Below, one piece after another: positions 154 through 7,705 of a DNA stretch of 8,223 nucleotides (within the stretch, counting starts at the first letter, position 1; each line of letters opens with the position of its first letter). The notes under the pieces were generated by a model. The model worked only from the letters and a program-made list of their open reading frames with translations, was not told the origin of the DNA and searched no databases. The position numbers and the translations under genes are program-made. Origin of the DNA: Octopus sinensis (taxonomy: Eukaryota). The DNA lies in assembly GCF_006345805.1 (NCBI RefSeq), contig NW_021828489.1:1-8223 (forward strand), in the 5' to 3' direction.

Positions 154-530
154 CTCTTTACTGTCTTTACTCTTTTACTTGTTTCAGTCATTTGACTGCG
201 GCCATGCTGGAGCACCGCCTTTAATCGAGAAACTCGACCCCAGGACTTATTCTTTTGTAAGCCCAGTACTTATTCTATCGGATTCTTTTGCCGAACCGCT
301 AAGTAACGGGGACATAAGCACACCAGCATTGGTTGTCAAGCAATGCTAGGGGGACAAACACAGACACACAAACACACACACGCATATATATATATATATA
401 TACATGTATACGACGGGCTTCTTTCAGTCTCCGTCTACCAAATCCACTCACAAGGCTTTGGTTGGCCCGAGGCTATAGTAGAAGACGCTTGCCCAGGGTG
501 CCACGCAGTGGGACTGAACCCGGAATCACG
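154..530 (-). mobile_element. tRNA-derived SINE, family A, 5'-truncated
   Basis: Minus strand has a B-box-like GGTTCAGTCC (511-520), an internal (TA)n/(TG)n tract (about 358-402) and a short-repeat tail (GTAAAAGAGTAAAGACAGTAAAGAG, about 154-178). Homologous pieces occur at 4792-4935, 4936-5008 and 5647-5754. The A-box part of the head is missing. Confidence 0.85.
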
Positions 531-908
531 GTATATTTCTTGCTCTTTCCGCCAAATACTCATGCAAACTCAACATGGTGTACTCCAGAATACTCTAGGA
601 TAAACATACAAATTAATAATGAATAGTGTTGCTTTTTGCTGTTGGGTTGCTTCCATGCATGGATACCTGATAGAGCAGCGGAGCGTTCCAGTCATGACAA
701 TTGCGTCGTTTTCTTTTCTTTCGCTTTCTTTCATTTTTCTTTTTCTTGACGTAGTGTATGTAACTAAAGTATCATTCGTGTATTTCGCTGTTATTTATAG
801 CAGATCGAGCGACTATGAAAAAAAGCCTTTTGCAAGCTCGTTGTGTTTCTTACATTAAAGCTGAAGCCATGAATTCACCGAAGAAAAACCAGTGTAATCC
901 CTGCTTTC

Positions 909-940
<32 letters not shown>

Positions 941-957
941 TAATAATAAAAATAATG

Positions 958-988
<31 letters not shown>

Positions 989-990
989 TC

Positions 991-1050
<60 letters not shown>

Positions 1051-1088
1051 TAATAATAATAATAATAATGATAATAATAATAATAATG

Positions 1089-1132
<44 letters not shown>

Positions 1133-1151
1133 AACAATAATAATAATAATG

Positions 1152-1183
<32 letters not shown>

Positions 1184-1197
1184 ATAATAATATGATA

Positions 1198-1249
<52 letters not shown>

Positions 1250-1252
1250 AAC

Positions 1253-1293
<41 letters not shown>

Positions 1294-1312
1294 ATTAATA
1301 AAAATAAATAAC

Positions 1313-1360
<48 letters not shown>

Positions 1361-1384
1361 AATAATAATATAATAATAATAATG

Positions 1385-1437
<53 letters not shown>
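909..1437. repeat. (AAT)n microsatellite with GAT/AAC variant units, 529 bp
   Basis: Directly visible; explains the poly-L/I/Y/N ORFs. Confidence 0.99.
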
Positions 1438-1577
1438 CCGTGTCAGACTGAAGTTTATACCATCGAATCCCTCTCAGATTAATCAAGCGCAACGTTTTGT
1501 GTTCCAGTCATTGAACACTGATTCTTTGCAAACTTTTGAAGATATCGCTCGCCGTTTCCCTTCAAATAAATTCATAA

Positions 1578-3469: not shown

Positions 3470-3565
3470 CACGTTAACTTCACGCTTGCACGTTAACTTC
3501 ACGAGCAGGCTGTACTGTCGATGGGATCAAGTGGAACCGTCGTCATCCTGACCGATGGAGTACCA
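3470..3565 (+). mobile_element. 3' fragment of SINE family C
   Basis: Aligns to 6769-6854: CACGTTAA-TCACGAGCAGGCTGT ... GGATCAA ... GGAACC-TCGTC ... ACCGA-GGAGT. Starts with a 15-bp direct duplication. Confidence 0.8.
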
Positions 3566-3610: not shown

Positions 3611-3652
<42 letters not shown>

Positions 3653-3671
3653 GTGTGTGCTTCCGGAGATA

Positions 3672-3710
<39 letters not shown>
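3572..3710. repeat. Compound microsatellite (GACA)n(CA)n(TA)n(TG)n with a short spacer
   Basis: Directly visible. Confidence 0.9.
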
Positions 3711-3711
<1 letters not shown>

Positions 3712-3713
<2 letters not shown>

Positions 3714-3758
3714 TTCCTGAAGATTCTCTTGAATGAAACAGTTCTAGCCTGTAGAAGC
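3712..3758 (+). ncRNA. Type I hammerhead ribozyme motif (variant stem II)
   Basis: Stem I GCTTC(3712-16)/GAAGC(3754-58). Core CTGAAGA(3717-23). Stem II TTC/GAA with a TCTT loop and one extra T3734. GAAA(3735-38). Stem III ACAG/CTGT with a 7-nt loop. Cleavage triplet GUA ending at 3753. Confidence 0.72.
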
Positions 3759-3795: not shown

Positions 3796-4748
3796 TCAGG
3801 TCATCTCATAATTTCAGTCCGAATTTTGAATAAAGAAAACAAGTGAGCAAATATTATATTTAATTGAAATTTAATCATCACTGTACTTTCCCTGATTATC
3901 TATGACTTCCTTCCATCTATTTTCAAGCTTTTTAATCCCATCAATGTAAAACTCTTTTGGTTTCAAAGCGAAGAACTCTGAAATGTCAGTTTCGACCTCC
4001 TCATGGCTTGCGAAAGTTATGTCCCCCAAATGATTCTGTAAACTACGAAACAAATAGTAGTCTGAAGGAGCAAGGTCGGGAGAATAAGGTGGATGAAGAA
4101 TTTTTTTCCCAACCAAGATCTTCGATCTTCTGTGATGTGATCTTTGCAGTGTGGAGTTGCGCATCGTCCTGATGAAACATCACTCCTTTTCGATTCACCT
4201 TCTCGGTTGTGATTGAGCTTTTTCCCTTTTACCAAGCCACTGTTTACGACGTTTAACATTTCGATCGAAGATCCATTTTCCGTTACCAGTTACAAGTCTA
4301 TCCAAAAAGGGTGAAATGTGTTCGCGAGAATGGAGAGAAGAACAGATGTCAACTCGGGATTTGCGGTTGCTTTCGGACAATACATGAGGCACCCATTTTC
4401 CAAGTTTAGGAATCTTTCCAAGTTGTTGAAGATGACAATGAACAGTTATATGGTTTGAACTAAGCTTTATTGCCAATTCTTCAACTGATAATGCAGGATT
4501 TTCCTCACGTATTGCCTCAAGAAGCTTATCATCAAACTCAACTGGACATCCTGTTCGATGTTCATCTTCAAGGCTGAGATCTCCACTTCTGAATTTTGCA
4601 ATCCATCTTCTGCAAGTGCTTTCATTCAAGCATTCTTTCCCATAAACTGAGTATGTTTCGAGTCGCTTCGCCGTAGAGTTTCTTTTTTTGTACTCATAAA
4701 GCATTATGTGCCTTAAATGCTCTTTGGATACTTCCATGTTAGAAAGGG

Positions 4749-4750
<2 letters not shown>
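3796..4750 (-). mobile_element. Mariner (Tc1/mariner, D34D) DNA transposon, defective, only the 3' TIR present
   Basis: Transposase homology, plus a terminus TA|TCAGGTCATCTCATAATTTCAGTCCGAA at 3796 matching the mariner YYAGRT end next to a TA. No second TIR was found in the window. Confidence 0.93.
3871..4737 (-). pseudogene. Mariner transposase pseudogene
   Basis: Motifs seen: WVPHVL; RLVTGNGKW (first catalytic D changed to N); FHQDDAQLH ... HPPYSPDLAPSDY (D34D spacing after correcting a +1 slip in the A7 run, T7 at 4101-4107 on the + strand); LxxRWxxVIDxxGxY. About 60 codons are deleted near 4198 (QPRR joined to VNRKG, out of frame). Confidence 0.95.

Positions 4751-4791
<41 letters not shown>
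4750..4791. repeat. (TA)21 microsatellite
   Basis: Directly visible; starts 13 bp upstream of the transposase ATG. Confidence 0.97.
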
Positions 4792-4792
<1 letters not shown>

Positions 4793-4935
4793 TTGTTTCA
4801 GTCATTTGACTGCGACCATGTGGGTGAACCGCCGCCTTGAATGTTTTTTTGTCGAATAATTCAACCCCATGGCTTATTTTTAGCCTATATACTTACTCTA
4901 TCCGTCTCTGGGCCGAACCGCTAAGTTGCGGGGGC
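4792..4935 (-). mobile_element. SINE family A, 3' half
   Basis: Collinear with 178-314 (CTTGTTTCAGTCATTTGACTGCG-CCATG ... GCCGAACCGCTAAGT ... GGGG). Confidence 0.85.
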
Positions 4936-5008
4936 GTTGAATTATTCGACAAAAAACATTCAAAGCGGCGGTTCTCCCACATGGTCGCAATCAAATGGCT
5001 GAAACAAG
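4936..5008 (+). repeat. Inverted copy of 4792-4865 (SINE tail)
   Basis: Reverse complement matches 4792-4865 with 4 substitutions and a 1-nt indel in a T-run. Confidence 0.92.
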
Positions 5009-5117
5009 TATATATATATATATATAATATTATTAGAGACAAAACCACTATTTTGCAAAACAATCAAGGAAAGACTTAATCAATACATAAAATTTTAATA
5101 AAAAGTCAATAAAACCG

Positions 5118-5160
5118 CCACTACAATTGTTTCTTGTCTTGATCGACAATCTTCAGGTGG
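5118..5160 (-). ncRNA. Type I minimal hammerhead ribozyme (mirror copy)
   Basis: Exact reverse complement of 5222-5264. Confidence 0.85.
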
Positions 5161-5221
5161 ACTTCCAATAAGTCATTTCAAATTATGAAACTTCATAATT
5201 TGAAACTGACTTATTGGAAGT

Positions 5222-5264
5222 CCACCTGAAGATTGTCGATCAAGACAAGAAACAATTGTAGTGG
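5222..5264 (+). ncRNA. Type I minimal hammerhead ribozyme
   Basis: Stem I CCAC(5222-25)/GTGG(5261-64). Core CTGAAGA(5226-32). Stem II TTGTC/GACAA with a GATCAA loop. GAAA(5249-52). Palindromic stem III ACAATTGT(5252-59). Cleavage triplet GUA ending at 5260. Confidence 0.88.
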
Positions 5265-5468
5265 CGGTTTTTTTGACTTTTTATTAAAATTTTATGTATT
5301 GATTAAGTCTTTCCTTGATTGTTTTGCAAAATAGTGGTTTTGTCTCTAATAATATTATATAATATTTTACTATAAAATTGGATTTAATCCTAAATCTGAT
5401 TTTTTCCCTGTAAATTTGGATTTATTCCCTAATATTTATTATTATTATATATATATATATATATATAT

Positions 5469-5560
5469 AACCCTTTCTAACATGGAAGTATCCAAAGAGC
5501 ATTTAAGGCACATAATGCTTTATGAGTACAAAAAAAGAAACTCTGCGGCGAAGCGACTCG

Positions 5561-5565
<5 letters not shown>
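5469..5565 (+). repeat. Inverted copy of mariner 5' segment 4654-4750
   Basis: 97 bp with 1 mismatch (encodes NSAAKRLET vs NSTAKRLET); ends abruptly in (CA)n. Confidence 0.95.
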
Positions 5566-5625
<60 letters not shown>

Positions 5626-5646
5626 CACACATATATATATATATAT
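5564..5646. repeat. (CA)n(TA)n microsatellite (internal tract of SINE family A)
   Basis: Directly visible; same position relative to the SINE head as 358-402. Confidence 0.9.
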
Positions 5647-5754
5647 ACACACAAATCTTTGGTCGGTCCGCGGCTATAGTAGAAAACTCTTGCTCAAGGT
5701 GCCACGAAGTGGGACTGAACCCAGAACCATGTGATTGGGAAGCAAGCTTCTTAC
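5647..5754 (-). mobile_element. SINE family A, 5' half with tRNA-like head
   Basis: Collinear with about 445-530 (CTTTGGT-GG-CCG-GGCTATAGTAGAA ... GGTGCCACG-AGTGGGACTGAACCC). B-box-like sequence at 5712-5721. Confidence 0.85.
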
Positions 5755-5798
5755 TTTTTATAATTCCAGTGTTAATAGATAAATTAATGCAACATTCA

Positions 5799-5860
5799 AG
5801 TACTGAGATCGATGTAATCGACTAACTCTCTCTCTCTTCAAAACTGATGCCTTGTGCCTA
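5799..5860 (+). mobile_element. 3' fragment of SINE family B
   Basis: AGTACTGAGATCGATGTAATCGACTAA resembles 7837-7860 and 7950-7972, followed by a CCTTGTGCC tail motif. Confidence 0.45.
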
Positions 5861-6469
5861 TTGGTGTTAGATGTACTCAGATCCGCTACCTTCTTACCCC
5901 CGTTTTCTCTATGCGTTATTTGGATATTACAAACTTTTTCAGAAATGATATGACCTTTCTTTATGTATCTTTTTGAAAACATATTTACAATGAAAATGAG
6001 TTTGCTTTGATTAATTCTTCCCCCCACCCTTTTTGATCATTTTACTTATATTGGGATGTCGTCTTGATGTCGCTAACTATTAACATCTTCAGCAACTGAG
6101 TAATTTTACATCTCCTCTTCTCTTACCCTATTTTATAAAGCAAGTGAATTTCATTTAAATTCGGTCCCATTTTGAAAAAAAAGACACTTTATTGGAGATT
6201 TTCAACTTTGTTTTTATTTGACTTGATTTGCAATGGCGTCAAATCAACAAGGAAAAATAATAAACATTTCCTGCGGATGCAAAGCAGAAAAACATGAACG
6301 TCCTGCTTTTCAGTGGGACACCCATAGTTTAGGTAAGGAAAATGTTGAGGATACCGAAAAAAAAAAAAAAAGGAATAGCTATTTGAGTGGTCTGGAGAAC
6401 TTATTCGATAAATGTAATAACGACAATAACAGCAACAACATTGACTATATCATACAGACAAATCACTGT

Positions 6470-6482
6470 TTGGCAAGCAAGC
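6470..6482 (+). repeat. Left target-site duplication TTGGCAAGCAAGC
   Basis: Identical 13-mer at 6855-6867. Confidence 0.92.
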
Positions 6483-6854
6483 GCCCAGTGGTTAGGGCAG
6501 CGGACTCGCGGTCATAGGATCGCGGTTTCCATTCCTAGACCGGGCGTTGTGAGTGTTTATTGAGCGAAAACACCTACAGCGCCACGAGGCTCCGGCAGGG
6601 GACGGTGGTGATCCCTGTTGTACTCTTTCACCACAACTTTCTCTCACGCTTACTTCCTCTTTCTGTTGTACCTGTATTTCAAAGGGCCGGCCTTGTCACT
6701 CTCTTGTGTCACGCTGAATATCCCCGAGAACTACGTTAAGGGTACACGTGTCTGTGGAGTGCTCAGCCACTTACACGTTAATATCACGAGCAGGCTGTTC
6801 CGTTGTTTCGGATCAACCGGAACCCTCGTCGTCGTAACCGACGGAGTGCTTCCA
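6483..6854 (+). mobile_element. tRNA-derived SINE, family C, near full length (372 bp)
   Basis: tRNA-like head with an A-box remnant GCCCAGTGGTT (6483-93) and a B-box-like GGTTTCCATTCC (6524-35). Flanked by a perfect 13-bp TSD. The 3' end matches 3470-3565. Confidence 0.9.
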
Positions 6855-6867
6855 TTGGCAAGCAAGC
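6855..6867 (+). repeat. Right target-site duplication TTGGCAAGCAAGC
   Basis: Identical 13-mer at 6470-6482. Confidence 0.92.
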
Positions 6868-7705
6868 AATGTTCAAATGGAGGCAGGGTTGTTGAAATTG
6901 CCACAAATATTGACATATTGGTTAAAGACAATGCTCAATCCAAAATAGAAGTGCAACAAAACTTTTTAAATGGGATTCCGTTTTTTATCCGAAAATTTTA
7001 TGCATGACAAAGCAACGAAAGGATCGAACTGCTTTTGTTCACAAAAGGAGAGCGAACGTTTCTTTGTCCTCGAGGTACCAGATAACCCAGATAACTCGAG
7101 ATTTGGAAAATATCTGGACTACATTTTGTCCATAGAAGGAGGTAAAGTTTATTGCCCCATCTTACTGGCCTTCACGATTGACAATGAGGTACGGCACCAT
7201 ATTATGCGGAACACCCGCTTATACGCTCGCTCTCAAATACACTGGATTATGCAATACAAATGCGAATGTAACATTGCAAGTAACACTCGTTCTTTGTTAC
7301 CATATTTGGTATTGGCAGGTGATAAGTGCACCAGTAACGATGAACATGTTGTGAAGAGAAAGTAGAATTTACAAGTCCTTATGATCTCTCCGGACCACAG
7401 AATAACCTTGAAGATGTGCCTTTTTGTTAGTACTGAGACAAAAAAAAAAGGATCAGGCTTGATGGCACAAAGTAAAAAGCGTAGTTATTAAAGCTGTGGT
7501 AGTAAGACCCACTTGAGGGAATTTGCCCTGTAGAGTTGGAAAACTGAAAATCGAAGGAGACGAGAATGTGGATGAGAAGAGCTCGTCACAGACTAAAGAG
7601 TTCAATCAGTCACAGGCCAGGTCTCGCTGCCTCAGTAGCATTGCCAGTCACACTACCGGACAGAGCTCGGAGGAAAACCTACCTCATTCTTGAATCAATA
7701 TTACT

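What the first reader, a model, noticed from the sequence alone, without database searches (positions are those of the whole stretch)
4654..5565. One fold-back inverted duplication explains two separate inverted repeats and sits inside a single SINE
Seen: 4936-5008 + (TA)n + 5469-5565 together equal the reverse complement of the contiguous block 4654-4865 (mariner 97 bp + (TA)n + SINE tail 74 bp), with a 70-bp spacer (4866-4935). The flanks 4792-4935 and 5564-5754 are the 3' and 5' halves of a same-orientation family A SINE. Compared with the copy at 154-530, about 45 bp is missing between them. Both junctions show microhomology: GT next to GGGG/CCCC at about 4931-4937, and ACA into (CA)n at 5563-5565. 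Inferred: a snap-back template switch (FoSTeS/MMBIR-like) copied about 212 bp backwards, then rejoined at the (CA)n tract. The hammerhead palindrome later landed in the duplicated (TA)n.
Basis: partly seen in the sequence, partly recalled or inferred. Interest (0 to 1): 0.8.

Follow-up and report, generated by a model that had tools for sequence, protein, structure and literature searches.

The report
Fold-back inverted duplication inside octopus SINE
A 212-base stretch of junk DNA (the end of a dead mariner transposon, a TA repeat and a SINE tail) was copied backwards into a break 70 bases away inside the same SINE, a clean but ordinary example of a known kind of DNA-copying accident in what appears to be an octopus genome.

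Summary
The reverse complement of 4654-4865 reappears as 4936-5008 + (TA)9, then an insert, then (TA)12 + 5470-5565. The arms differ by 6 substitutions and 1 indel in about 170 non-repeat bases. The longest exact inverted match is 99 nt, against at most 18 nt in shuffles.

The flanks 4792-4937 and about 5561-5754 align collinearly, in the same orientation and with similar divergence, to other copies of one tRNA-derived SINE. That family is also present in Octopus vulgaris. Between the two flanks 40-54 bp of SINE is missing.

Both junctions show short microhomology: GT within GGnGT at 4933-4937, and ACA (possibly AAACA) at 5561-5565.

The best reading is a single switch-and-return, fold-back event of four-point type 3-2-1-4. 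The sequence cannot tell repair of a break from a replication-fork switch.

The insert is a nearly spacer-less palindrome of 2 x 170 bp. Each arm carries a minimal hammerhead-like motif, there is a tail on one side only, and it sits in (TA)n. These are the habits of Penelope-like elements. It is present in the copied arm only, so it arrived at or after the duplication. Rfam hammerhead models do not score it.

No orthologous locus could be reached, so the empty-site test remains undone. This is a new member of a known kind, of low to moderate interest.

The parts
3797..4750 (-). Degenerate, 5'-truncated mariner (Mos1-type) copy. The 3' inverted terminal repeat is at 3797. The transposase start codon is at 4737, and only 13 nt of 5' leader are kept.
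   Evidence: Pfam HTH_48 E = 8e-14. Relatives include Limulus SETMAR-like proteins (73-74% identity) and an Octopus vulgaris protein (79%). It is 86-93% identical at DNA level to copies in O. vulgaris L002. A fuller copy, L003, has about 180 nt of terminal repeat plus leader before the ATG. That leader is absent anywhere in the window.
4654..4749 (-). Donor segment A: the first 84 nt of the mariner ORF plus 12 nt of leader. This is the last part copied.
   Evidence: Its reverse complement equals 5470-5565 with one mismatch, 4674/5545.
4750..4791 (.). Donor (TA)21 microsatellite between the mariner and the SINE tail.
   Evidence: TRF: 21.0 copies, 100% matches.
4792..4865 (-). Donor segment S1: the 3' end of the SINE. 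This is the first part copied.
   Evidence: Its reverse complement equals 4936-5008 with 4 substitutions and 1 indel. It aligns to SINE copies at window 176-245 and in L002.
4866..4935 (-). Spacer (the loop of the fold-back): the next 70 nt of the same SINE, present once.
   Evidence: Collinear with window copy 243-312.
4933..4937 (.). Junction 1 (switch points 1 and 2). SINE identity runs to 4937 (GGGGGCGT here, against GGGGACAT in the copy at 308-315). Identity to the copied block starts at 4936, or at 4933 with one mismatch. The shared bases are GT, inside an imperfect GGnGT.
   Evidence: Read directly from the sequence. Alignments. Repeat I18.
4936..5008 (+). Inverted copy of S1.
5009..5026 (.). 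Left part of the copied TA run, (TA)9.
5021..5361 (.). Near-perfect palindrome of 2 x about 170 nt, centred at about 5190/5191. The arms differ by 1 substitution and 1 one-nt indel. A minimal type-I hammerhead-like motif lies at 5222-5264 (+) and 5118-5160 (-). The sense copies are head to head, with their 3' ends pointing outward.
   Evidence: Arm alignment. A descriptor written after seeing the motif hits once per arm and 0 times in 2000 shuffled windows. No Rfam hammerhead hit.
5362..5445. One-sided 84-nt extra piece next to the palindrome. It contains an internal repeat that TRF reports as period 21 (5391-5430) and the repeat finder as two 31-nt copies. Its origin is unknown.
   Evidence: It has no counterpart in the left arm or elsewhere in the window.
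5446..5469 (.). Right part of the copied TA run, (TA)12.
   Evidence: TRF.
5470..5565 (+). Inverted copy of donor segment A. It encodes the first 28 residues of the mariner transposase and keeps the ancestral Ala where the donor now has Thr.
5561..5565 (.). Junction 2 (switch points 3 and 4). The copy ends ...CGAAACA and runs into the SINE's internal CA tract. ACA is certainly shared. AAACA is shared if the ancestral SINE had the AAACA seen at 356-360 and 370-374 of the other window copy.
   Evidence: Sequence and alignment.
5563..5754 (-). 5' part of the same SINE: the internal (CA)34 and (TA)8 microsatellites, then the tRNA-like head. About 18 nt are missing from the extreme 5' end.
   Evidence: TRF. 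84% identical to window 446-528. 87% identical to L002 14103-14210. Alignment.

Best explanation
One switch-and-return template switch, of the fold-back or snap-back kind, happened inside an old SINE.

Shown:
- Before the event the locus read, on the + strand: mariner (5'-truncated) - (TA)n - SINE 3' end ... SINE 5' end.
- After it, 40-54 bp of the SINE are replaced by the reverse complement of the 212 bp that lie 70 bp to the left.

Inferred sequence of events:
1. A free 3' end of the + strand arose in the SINE at about 4937, next to the SINE's own CA/TA microsatellite.
2. That end folded back on its own strand, or on the equivalent sister strand, and paired by GT (GGnGT) with ACnCC at 4864-4868.
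3. It was extended leftwards through the SINE tail, the (TA)21 run and 97 nt of mariner.
4. The new strand then came off and paired by ACA/AAACA with the CA tract on the far side of the gap, where normal copying or ligation resumed.

I think repair of a two-ended break is slightly more likely than a stalled-fork switch. That would mean a resected end, hairpin-primed synthesis and capture of the second end by microhomology-mediated joining. The sequence alone cannot decide between them.

Later, or at the earliest in the same episode, a head-to-head pair of 5'-truncated, hammerhead-bearing retroelement ends entered the copied (TA)n. These look like Penelope-like elements. Both arms have since picked up a few point changes. 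On a published O. vulgaris repeat clock the duplication is roughly 5 million years old.

No function is implied. This is a mutational scar in repeat DNA.
For: - Contiguous donor and split copy. Chance is excluded: 99 nt against at most 18 nt in shuffles.
- The donor side is identified by continuity with the rest of the mariner and the SINE.
- The switch points are ordered 3 (4654) < 2 (4865) < 1 (4937) < 4 (CA tract). This is the published four-point type '3-2-1-4'. It creates an inverted repeat and is compatible with an intra-strand switch (PMC5453318).
- Microhomology at both junctions and a small deletion at the site. The same anatomy is described for fold-back insertions at yeast breaks: imperfect inverted microhomology, a 41-nt loop, 0-5 bp at the capture junction, and sizes from 2 to about 150 bp (PMC11724301). 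It also matches snap-back SD-MMEJ (PMC2943611 and PMC5728401, listed).
- The arms share about 10 substitutions and a 13-nt insertion relative to three other SINE copies, but differ from each other at only 5 sites in the SINE part. The copy was therefore made from an already aged SINE.
- Changes since the event lie on both arms: 3 derived on the right, 2 on the left, including the mariner Thr/Ala site polarised with 9 relatives. The arms are therefore real, independently evolving DNA and not an assembly echo.
- The TA run is of similar length in both copies: 21 units against 9+3+12.
- Timing uses the O. vulgaris calibration of JC 0.065 = 18 My (PMC13282606) and 6 differences in 170 nt.
Against: - No orthologous or polymorphic empty site was seen. 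The ancestral state is reconstructed from other SINE copies only.
- Only three other copies of the SINE were available, so subfamily differences cannot be told from post-insertion changes.
- At 212 nt, the copied tract is longer than most reported break-site fold-back insertions.
- Folding the single strand 4850-4937 does not favour pairing of the 3' end with 4864-4868. Priming therefore relied on a fleeting 2-5 nt contact.
- The differences between the arms cluster in the part copied first (5 in 73 against 1 in 97, Fisher p = 0.085). A single age does not predict this, although it is not significant.
Confidence: 0.8

Rival explanations
1. The same product arose with no double-strand break. 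During replication, the nascent strand left its template at about 4937 and copied the opposite (lagging or sister) strand from 4864 back to 4654. It then returned to the original template 40-54 nt downstream at the CA tract. This would be a short-range FoSTeS/MMBIR-type event, or 'template switch mutation'. It is the reader's wording, and it differs from my preferred version only in what produced the free 3' end.
For: - Microhomology at both switches.
- The event fits the four-point model. The authors of that model argue that most human events are inter-strand and replicative (PMC5453318).
- The site abuts long CA and TA runs. From general knowledge, such runs stall forks.
- 212 nt is long for break-site fold-backs.
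Against: - Nothing in the sequence requires a fork.
- With point 2 lying before point 1, an intra-strand snap-back is equally possible.
- The small deletion and the short capture homology are just what break repair gives.
Confidence: 0.35
2. The inverted copy was made by the reverse transcriptase that inserted the SINE. During target-primed reverse transcription the enzyme jumped from the SINE RNA onto its own cDNA and the upstream target DNA, copied 212 nt, and jumped back to the RNA at the UG tract.
For: - The first-strand cDNA would be the + strand, growing from 4792 rightwards. That is the right direction for a snap-back at 4937 (orientation).
- Template jumping by retroelement reverse transcriptases is established knowledge.
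Against: - The duplication would then be as old as the SINE. Yet the arms share about 10 substitutions and a 13-nt insertion relative to three other copies and differ from each other at only 5 sites in 73 nt.
- The copied block includes 97 nt of double-stranded target DNA and a ready-made (TA)21 run. The enzyme would have had to unwind both.
Confidence: 0.05
3. Two or more unrelated events produced the structure. For example, a free DNA fragment copied from the neighbourhood was ligated in reverse into a break. Or a second mariner-(TA)n-SINE junction from elsewhere in the genome happened to land here.
For: Capture of stray fragments at breaks is known.
Against: - The donor lies only 70 bp away.
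- Both ends of the copy fall at microhomologies with the recipient SINE.
- The mariner/TA/SINE junctions are base-for-base the same in both copies.
- The mariner truncation point is peculiar to this copy. Other copies keep more leader.
Confidence: 0.05
4. The structure is an assembly artefact, such as a chimeric or fold-back long read.
For: - Inverted duplications and spacer-less palindromes are known artefacts of some long-read libraries (general knowledge).
- One of the arm differences is a homopolymer length.
- The palindrome is almost perfect.
Against: - The arms differ by 6 substitutions, spread over both arms relative to outgroups.
- One arm carries a 425-bp insert.
- The structure is interstitial, with both flanks continuing the same SINE.
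- Both junctions have biological-looking microhomology.
Confidence: 0.03

Closest known systems
Short-range template switch mutations, four-point model type 3-2-1-4 / 1-4-3-2 (Loytynoja and Goldman 2017, PMC5453318)
   Same: A fragment between points 1 and 4 is replaced by the reverse complement of a nearby fragment 2->3. This creates a new inverted repeat flanked by unrelated sequence. The point order is 3<2<1<4.
   Different: This event copied 212 nt, including a whole microsatellite. It was inferred from repeat-family consensus, not from an outgroup genome. The published model was built for short mutation clusters, so this event is probably on the long side for it. One search gives no length distribution, so that comparison rests on my own impression.
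Fold-back (snap-back) templated inverted insertions at double-strand breaks: SD-MMEJ in Drosophila (PMC2943611, PMC5728401), Pol-delta/NHEJ hybrid events in yeast (PMC11724301), Pol-theta snap-back extension (PMC4912351)
   Same: Priming occurs at a short imperfect inverted microhomology next to the break. The loop is tens of nt long: 64-70 here, 41 in the yeast system. The new strand is unwound and captured at 0-5 nt of homology, and a small deletion results.
   Different: At 212 nt the copy exceeds the reported range (mostly under 14 bp, up to about 150 bp in yeast). The enzymes cannot be known here. The event is germ-line and fixed in an assembly, not induced.
Large fold-back inverted duplications of human chromosomes (Hermetz et al. 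2014, PMC3907307) and MMBIR/FoSTeS complex rearrangements
   Same: An inverted duplication with a single-copy spacer and microhomology at the junction.
   Different: From general knowledge, those are kilobase-to-megabase duplications, usually with a terminal deletion and a dicentric intermediate. This one is 212 bp, interstitial, and returns to the same molecule about 50 bp downstream.
Penelope-like element insertions (for the palindrome only; PMC8557442, PMC4209133)
   Same: An inverted 5'-truncated copy lies head to head with another. There is an extension on one side only. The insertion sits in (TA)n. Each copy has a hammerhead motif whose helix III is a single A-U pair closing a palindromic loop.
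   Different: There is no reverse transcriptase ORF and no family members to compare. The motif has U10.1-A11.1 instead of the usual G-C, a 4-bp helix I and a 6-nt loop 3. No Rfam hammerhead model scores it. The one-sided tail is 84 nt, against the 30-40 nt described.

Membership tests
Template switch mutation, four-point type 3-2-1-4 | The new fragment is the reverse complement of a nearby stretch of the same locus. | tested here: met
   The reverse complement of 4654-4865 equals 4936-5008 + TA run + 5470-5565, 96-99% identical.
Template switch mutation, four-point type 3-2-1-4 | A single switch and return, with point order 3<2<1<4 and point 4 not before point 1. | tested here: met
   Points lie at 4654, 4865, 4937 and the CA tract at 5561-5565. 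That CA position corresponds to 40-54 nt downstream of point 1 in the intact SINE.
Template switch mutation, four-point type 3-2-1-4 | The ancestral state is established from an outgroup or a polymorphic allele. | not testable with these tools
   No octopus orthologue was reachable. Exact look-ups, two protein searches and the metagenome and viral scans gave nothing useful. Other copies of the SINE served as a proxy.
Fold-back templated insertion at a double-strand break (SD-MMEJ / TMEJ / Pol-delta + end joining) | Inverted microhomology at the priming site next to the break. | tested here: met
   The 3' end ...GGGCGT pairs with ACCCC at 4864-4868: the terminal GT pairs, then one mismatch, then GG pairs.
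Fold-back templated insertion at a double-strand break (SD-MMEJ / TMEJ / Pol-delta + end joining) | The second junction is made with 0-5 nt of homology, often with loss of a few tens of bases. | tested here: met
   ACA (up to AAACA) at 5561-5565. Between 40 and 54 nt of SINE are lost.
Fold-back templated insertion at a double-strand break (SD-MMEJ / TMEJ / Pol-delta + end joining) | Insert length within the reported range (2 to about 150 bp, mostly under 35 bp). | tested here: not met
   212 nt were copied, against the range in PMC11724301. This lowers membership of the short-insert class, but not the likeness of mechanism.
Fold-back templated insertion at a double-strand break (SD-MMEJ / TMEJ / Pol-delta + end joining) | Dependence on a break and on Pol theta, or on Pol delta/Pol32 and end-joining factors. 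| not testable with these tools
   This needs genetics.
L1/LINE twin priming inversion | The inverted segment consists of retroelement sequence only and lies within one insertion bounded by target-site duplications. | tested here: not met
   The inverted segment includes 97 nt of mariner and a (TA)21 run from outside the SINE.
   Alignment to window 154-530 and to O. vulgaris L002 14103-14700.
   Substitution identity is similar for both halves: 83-85% and 86-89%. Only three comparison copies were available. The 3' end abuts (TA)21, so no target-site duplication can be read.
Hammerhead ribozyme (type I, metazoan/PLE style) | Core CUGANGA ... GAA, an A15.1-U16.1 pair, cleavage triplet NUH, and helices I and II. 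| tested here: met
   CCAC CUGAAGA UUGUC-GAUCAA-GACAA GAA A-CAAUUG-U A GUGG at 5222-5264 (+) and 5118-5160 (-). The descriptor had 0 hits in 2000 shuffles. It was written after seeing the motif.
Hammerhead ribozyme (type I, metazoan/PLE style) | Recognition by curated covariance models; a G10.1-C11.1 pair; self-cleavage. | tested here: not met
   No Rfam hammerhead family hit at E <= 1 on the window or at E <= 10 on 5100-5300. The 10.1-11.1 pair is U-A. Cleavage was not tested.
Penelope-like element | A reverse transcriptase with GIY-YIG endonuclease, or clear sequence kinship to a coding element. | not testable with these tools
   The 425-bp insert has no ORF, and no octopus genome could be searched. 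There was no match in 57 kb of fetched loci.

The most novel reading that the evidence does not exclude
This may not be a one-off accident. The SINE family may carry a recurrent break point (sense strand GTTT|AC, next to its internal CA/TA microsatellite), perhaps an endonuclease-prone site. Unusually long, hairpin-primed copying would then start there. If so, a SINE family that fills over a tenth of octopus genomes would be a steady source of new long inverted repeats made of transposon pieces. Such repeats could fold into hairpin RNAs.

The only hint is that the single full copy seen in O. vulgaris is broken within 2 nt of the same position, by an unrelated 240-bp insert.
Probability: 0.05. 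Interest if true: 0.6.

Novelty: new member of a known kind. Interest (0 to 1): 0.28.

Why it matters
It is a tidy natural specimen in which every step of a switch-and-return copying error can be read from one sequence. The surrounding repeats act as a built-in ancestral reference. It shows that in a cephalopod germ line such events can copy over 200 nt, straight through a (TA)21 run. It also shows how they create long inverted repeats from transposon fragments. Repeat annotation would otherwise report these as separate mariner and SINE 'insertions'.

It does not reveal a new mechanism or a functional element. The nested palindrome is a useful reminder that Penelope-like insertions with weak hammerhead motifs escape the Rfam models.

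Tried and rejected
- Exact look-ups of four window ORFs, two of which span the junctions, found nothing on record.
- A protein search with the mariner ORF gave only paralogues, the best octopus hit being 79% identical. A search with the decayed ORF at 6233-7365 gave no hits. No orthologous locus could therefore be fetched.
- A metagenome scan for a SINE 20-mer gave one chance hit in unrelated DNA, L001. The viral scan gave none.
- I looked for the missing mariner 5' end elsewhere in the window, to test whether the SINE had split the mariner. It was not found.
- I tested whether the 3' end is predisposed to fold onto 4864-4868. It is not.
- I tested whether the arm differences are copying errors confined to the new arm. 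This is rejected, because derived changes lie on both arms.
- I considered that the equal TA counts (21 = 9+12) prove recency. I dropped this, because a further (TA)3 lies between the palindrome and its tail.
- I checked whether the 240-bp insert in the L002 SINE is another local inverted copy. It is not. It has an open frame with no Pfam hit.
- Rfam hits to miRNA families over the palindrome and the microsatellites are all below gathering score. They reflect any long hairpin, not genes.
Full report
**What is there**

Reading 4500-5900 and running the repeat finder show three nested inverted repeats:
- 4648-4773 / 5446-5571: 126 nt, 98% complementary.
- 4774-4849 / 4951-5026: 76 nt, 95%. This continues as 4845-4868 / 4933-4956: 24 nt, 96%.
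- 5021-5178 / 5204-5361: 158 nt, 99%.

A global alignment of the reverse complement of 4640-4940 to the two right-hand stretches shows that the first two repeats are one repeat interrupted by the third. The contiguous block 4654-4865 reappears backwards as 4936-5008, a TA run, an insert, a TA run, and 5470-5565. The longest exact inverted match outside pure dinucleotide runs is 99 nt. In 30 dinucleotide-preserving shuffles it was 10-18 nt.

**Identity of the pieces**

*Mariner.* The ORF 4195-4737 (minus strand) hits the Mos1 transposase HTH domain at E = 8e-14. The 28 codons at 5482-5565 (+) hit the same domain. Its closest relatives in the big protein collection are Limulus SETMAR-like proteins (73-74% identity) and an Octopus vulgaris hypothetical protein (79%).

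Fetching the O. vulgaris locus (L002, GCA_951406725.2) and an ENA contig (L003) gave mariner copies 82-93% identical at DNA level. L003 shows the complete 5' end, about 180 nt of terminal repeat and leader before the ATG. The window copy keeps only 13 nt of leader before the (TA)21 run, and the rest is nowhere in the window.

*SINE.* The stretches 4792-4937 and 5563-5754 align to the copy at 154-530 and to a copy in O. vulgaris L002 (14103-14700). They are collinear, in the same orientation, and cover adjacent, non-overlapping parts of the element. The L002 copy shows the tRNA-like head, so the SINE lies on the minus strand of the window, with its head at 5754 and its tail at 4792. The presence of this SINE and this mariner family in O. 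vulgaris places the window in an octopus or a close relative. I could not tell which species.

**Is it one SINE?**

Relative to the window copy, SINE identity on the left runs to 4937 (reference position 315). On the right it resumes in the CA-rich stretch, at reference 356 or 370, depending on which AAACA is used.

Substitution identity to the two better copies is 85% and 83% for the 3' half, and 86% and 89% for the 5' half. Between those two copies themselves, the 3' segment is also the more variable one (88% against 93%). The halves therefore look equally old. This is what one insertion predicts, but three comparison copies are too few for a subfamily diagnosis. No target-site duplication can be read, because the tail abuts the TA run.

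**Which copy is the donor?**

The left copy is continuous with the remaining 860 nt of mariner on one side and with 70 more nt of SINE on the other. The right copy stops at both ends. The left copy is therefore the original.

**Junctions**

*Junction 1.* The sequence reads ...CTAAGTTGCGGGGGCGT|TGAATTATTCG. SINE identity extends through GGGGGCGT, compared with GGGGACAT in the copy at 308-315. The CG is decayed in the two copies that cover this position, the window copy and L002 8325-8480. Identity to the reverse complement of the donor (GGGGTTGAATT) starts at 4936, or at 4933 if one mismatch is allowed. GT is therefore shared, inside an imperfect GGnGT.

*Junction 2.* The copy ends ...GACTCGAAACA, where the donor would continue TACTCAG. 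The sequence runs instead into (CA)34. ACA is shared for certain. AAACA is shared if the ancestral SINE had that motif, as the other window copy does, twice.

**Timing**

The arms differ at 4674/5545 in the mariner part. In the SINE part they differ at 4802/4998, 4810/4990, 4825/4975, 4836/4964 and 4866/4935, plus one T7/A6 length difference.

Nine mariner relatives show that the right arm keeps the ancestral Ala and the donor has changed to Thr. Three other SINE copies polarise three changes to the right arm and one to the left, with one site and the indel left ambiguous. Both arms have thus changed since the event. That argues against an assembly echo and against the idea that all differences are copying errors.

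In contrast, the two arms share about ten substitutions and a 13-nt insertion that the other SINE copies lack. The copy was therefore taken from an already aged SINE. This speaks against a reverse-transcriptase jump at the moment of SINE insertion.

With 6 differences in 170 nt and the calibration used for O. vulgaris repeats (JC 0.065 = 18 My; PMC13282606), the event is of the order of 5 My old, with wide error. The differences cluster in the part copied first (5 in 73 against 1 in 97, p = 0.085). This remains unexplained.

**Mechanism**

The four switch points are ordered 3 (4654) < 2 (4865) < 1 (4937) < 4 (CA tract). This is the published '3-2-1-4' type of template switch mutation, which creates an inverted repeat and is compatible with an intra-strand switch (PMC5453318).

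The same anatomy is described experimentally for fold-back insertions at breaks in yeast (PMC11724301). A resected 3' end pairs at a short imperfect inverted microhomology, leaving a loop of tens of nucleotides. It is extended and unwound, and is then captured by the other end at 0-5 nt of homology. The snap-back form of synthesis-dependent microhomology-mediated end joining has the same anatomy (PMC2943611 and PMC5728401).

The present case has a 64-70-nt loop, 2-5 nt of homology at each junction and a 40-54-nt loss. It differs in length: 212 nt, against mostly under 35 nt and up to about 150 nt. Folding the single strand does not predispose the 3' end to the priming site.

Break repair and a fork-based switch give the same product. 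I lean slightly to a break, because a second end was evidently available about 50 nt away, and the capture junction plus the small deletion are typical of end joining. This is inference only. The site lies next to the SINE's own long CA and TA runs, a plausible source of breaks or stalls.

**The insert**

The palindrome runs from about 5021 to 5361, centred at 5190/5191. Its arms differ by one substitution and one single-base indel, so it has practically no spacer. It is followed, on one side only, by 84 nt of unrelated sequence (5362-5445), and it is embedded in TA repeats: (TA)9 on the left, (TA)3 between palindrome and tail, and (TA)12 on the right.

Rfam finds no hammerhead, either on the whole window at E <= 1 or on 5100-5300 at E <= 10. 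It finds only sub-threshold miRNA-hairpin matches, which any long hairpin gives.

By eye, however, each arm carries on opposite strands CCAC-CUGAAGA-UUGUC(GAUCAA)GACAA-GAA-A(CAAUUG)U-A|GUGG. That is the hammerhead core, with a 5-bp helix II, a one-pair helix III closing a palindromic loop, a GUA cleavage triplet and a 4-bp helix I. A descriptor of this shape found these two sites and none in 2000 shuffled windows. The descriptor was written after seeing the motif, so this overstates the significance.

A short helix III with a palindromic loop, working in dimers, is the published style of metazoan and Penelope-like-element hammerheads (PMC4209133). Published habits of Penelope-like elements (PMC8557442), which are present and recently active in O. 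vulgaris, include:
- head-to-head inverted 5'-truncated copies;
- an extension on one side only;
- a liking for (TA)n.

The two sense copies here are head to head, with their 3' ends pointing outward. There are four caveats: there is no reverse transcriptase ORF, no family members could be searched, the 10.1-11.1 pair is U-A, and the tail is longer than described.

The insert is absent from the donor TA run, so it came at or after the duplication. Its nearly identical arms are consistent with a later arrival, but not significantly so (1 in 168 against 6 in 170, p = 0.12).

**What could not be done**

The decisive test is an orthologous or polymorphic locus with the intact SINE, or with the duplication but no palindrome. 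It was out of reach. The public collections on hand hold almost no octopus DNA that can be addressed by sequence. Exact look-ups of junction-spanning ORFs, two protein searches and two DNA scans all failed to bring in the locus.

**Verdict**

The exact enzymology is open. It is a well-preserved example of a known class of mutation in repeat DNA, with no sign of function. It is a new member of a known kind, of low to moderate interest.

Noticed in passing
window 5118-5160 (-) and 5222-5264 (+): Each palindrome arm holds a minimal type-I hammerhead-like motif: CUGAAGA core, 5-bp helix II, an A-U helix III closing the palindromic loop CAAUUG, and a GUA cleavage site. The Rfam hammerhead models miss it. 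Together with the head-to-head arrangement, the one-sided 84-nt tail and the (TA)n target, it looks like a Penelope-like element remnant.
   Followed up: partly
L002 14103-14700 (Octopus vulgaris OX597837.1): The one full copy of the same SINE seen in O. vulgaris is broken within 2 nt of the SINE position of junction 1 here. The break is a 240-bp insert (14346-14583) with a fully open minus-strand frame (RLHWYGH...GRPRKTW; no Pfam hit), plus a 29-nt loss. From memory the frame resembles the C-terminal end of a LINE ORF2. This is either a possible recurrent break site or a coincidence.
   Followed up: partly
window 6472-6868: A second, different tRNA-derived SINE (about 6485-6855) is flanked by a 13-nt target-site duplication, TTGGCAAGCAAGC (6472-6484 and 6856-6868). 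It sits inside a decayed reading frame that runs from 6233 to 7365 with one frameshift near 6990. That frame has no Pfam hit and no homologue in the protein collection. A fragment of the same SINE family lies at about 3485-3560.
   Followed up: partly
window 3797-4750: The mariner copy is about 950 bp long, and its frame is broken several times between 3871 and 4259. No Pfam hit to a transposase catalytic domain was found in two of the downstream ORFs (3871-4164 and 4017-4259). The copy lacks its 5' terminal repeat and about 165 nt of leader, which are replaced by (TA)21.
   Followed up: partly
window 3636-3725: A tandem duplication of about 45 bp: (TA)n GTGTGTGCTTCCGGAGATATCTC followed by (TA)n GTGTGTGCTTCCTGAAGATTCTC. 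It lies next to GACA, CA and TA microsatellites. Rfam gives sub-threshold miRNA-hairpin matches here that reflect only the TA/CA/TG symmetry.
   Followed up: no
window 900-1440: A long, imperfect (ATA)n/(ATG)n minisatellite-like tract of about 540 bp.
   Followed up: no
L002 12093-12875 and 16138-17000: A roughly 0.8-kb inverted repeat (91-99% complementary) with arms 3.3 kb apart, in the O. vulgaris locus next to mariner copies. It also encloses a 174-bp tandem array (14902-15831). It could be a transposon with long terminal inverted repeats, or another inverted duplication.
   Followed up: no
window 5563-5647: The SINE's internal microsatellite has grown to (CA)34 followed by (TA)8. The copy at 354-402 has only an interrupted CA-rich stretch of about 30 nt followed by (TA)10. 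A further 37 nt of SINE (reference about 409-445) is missing to the right of the TA run in the copy studied here.
   Followed up: no
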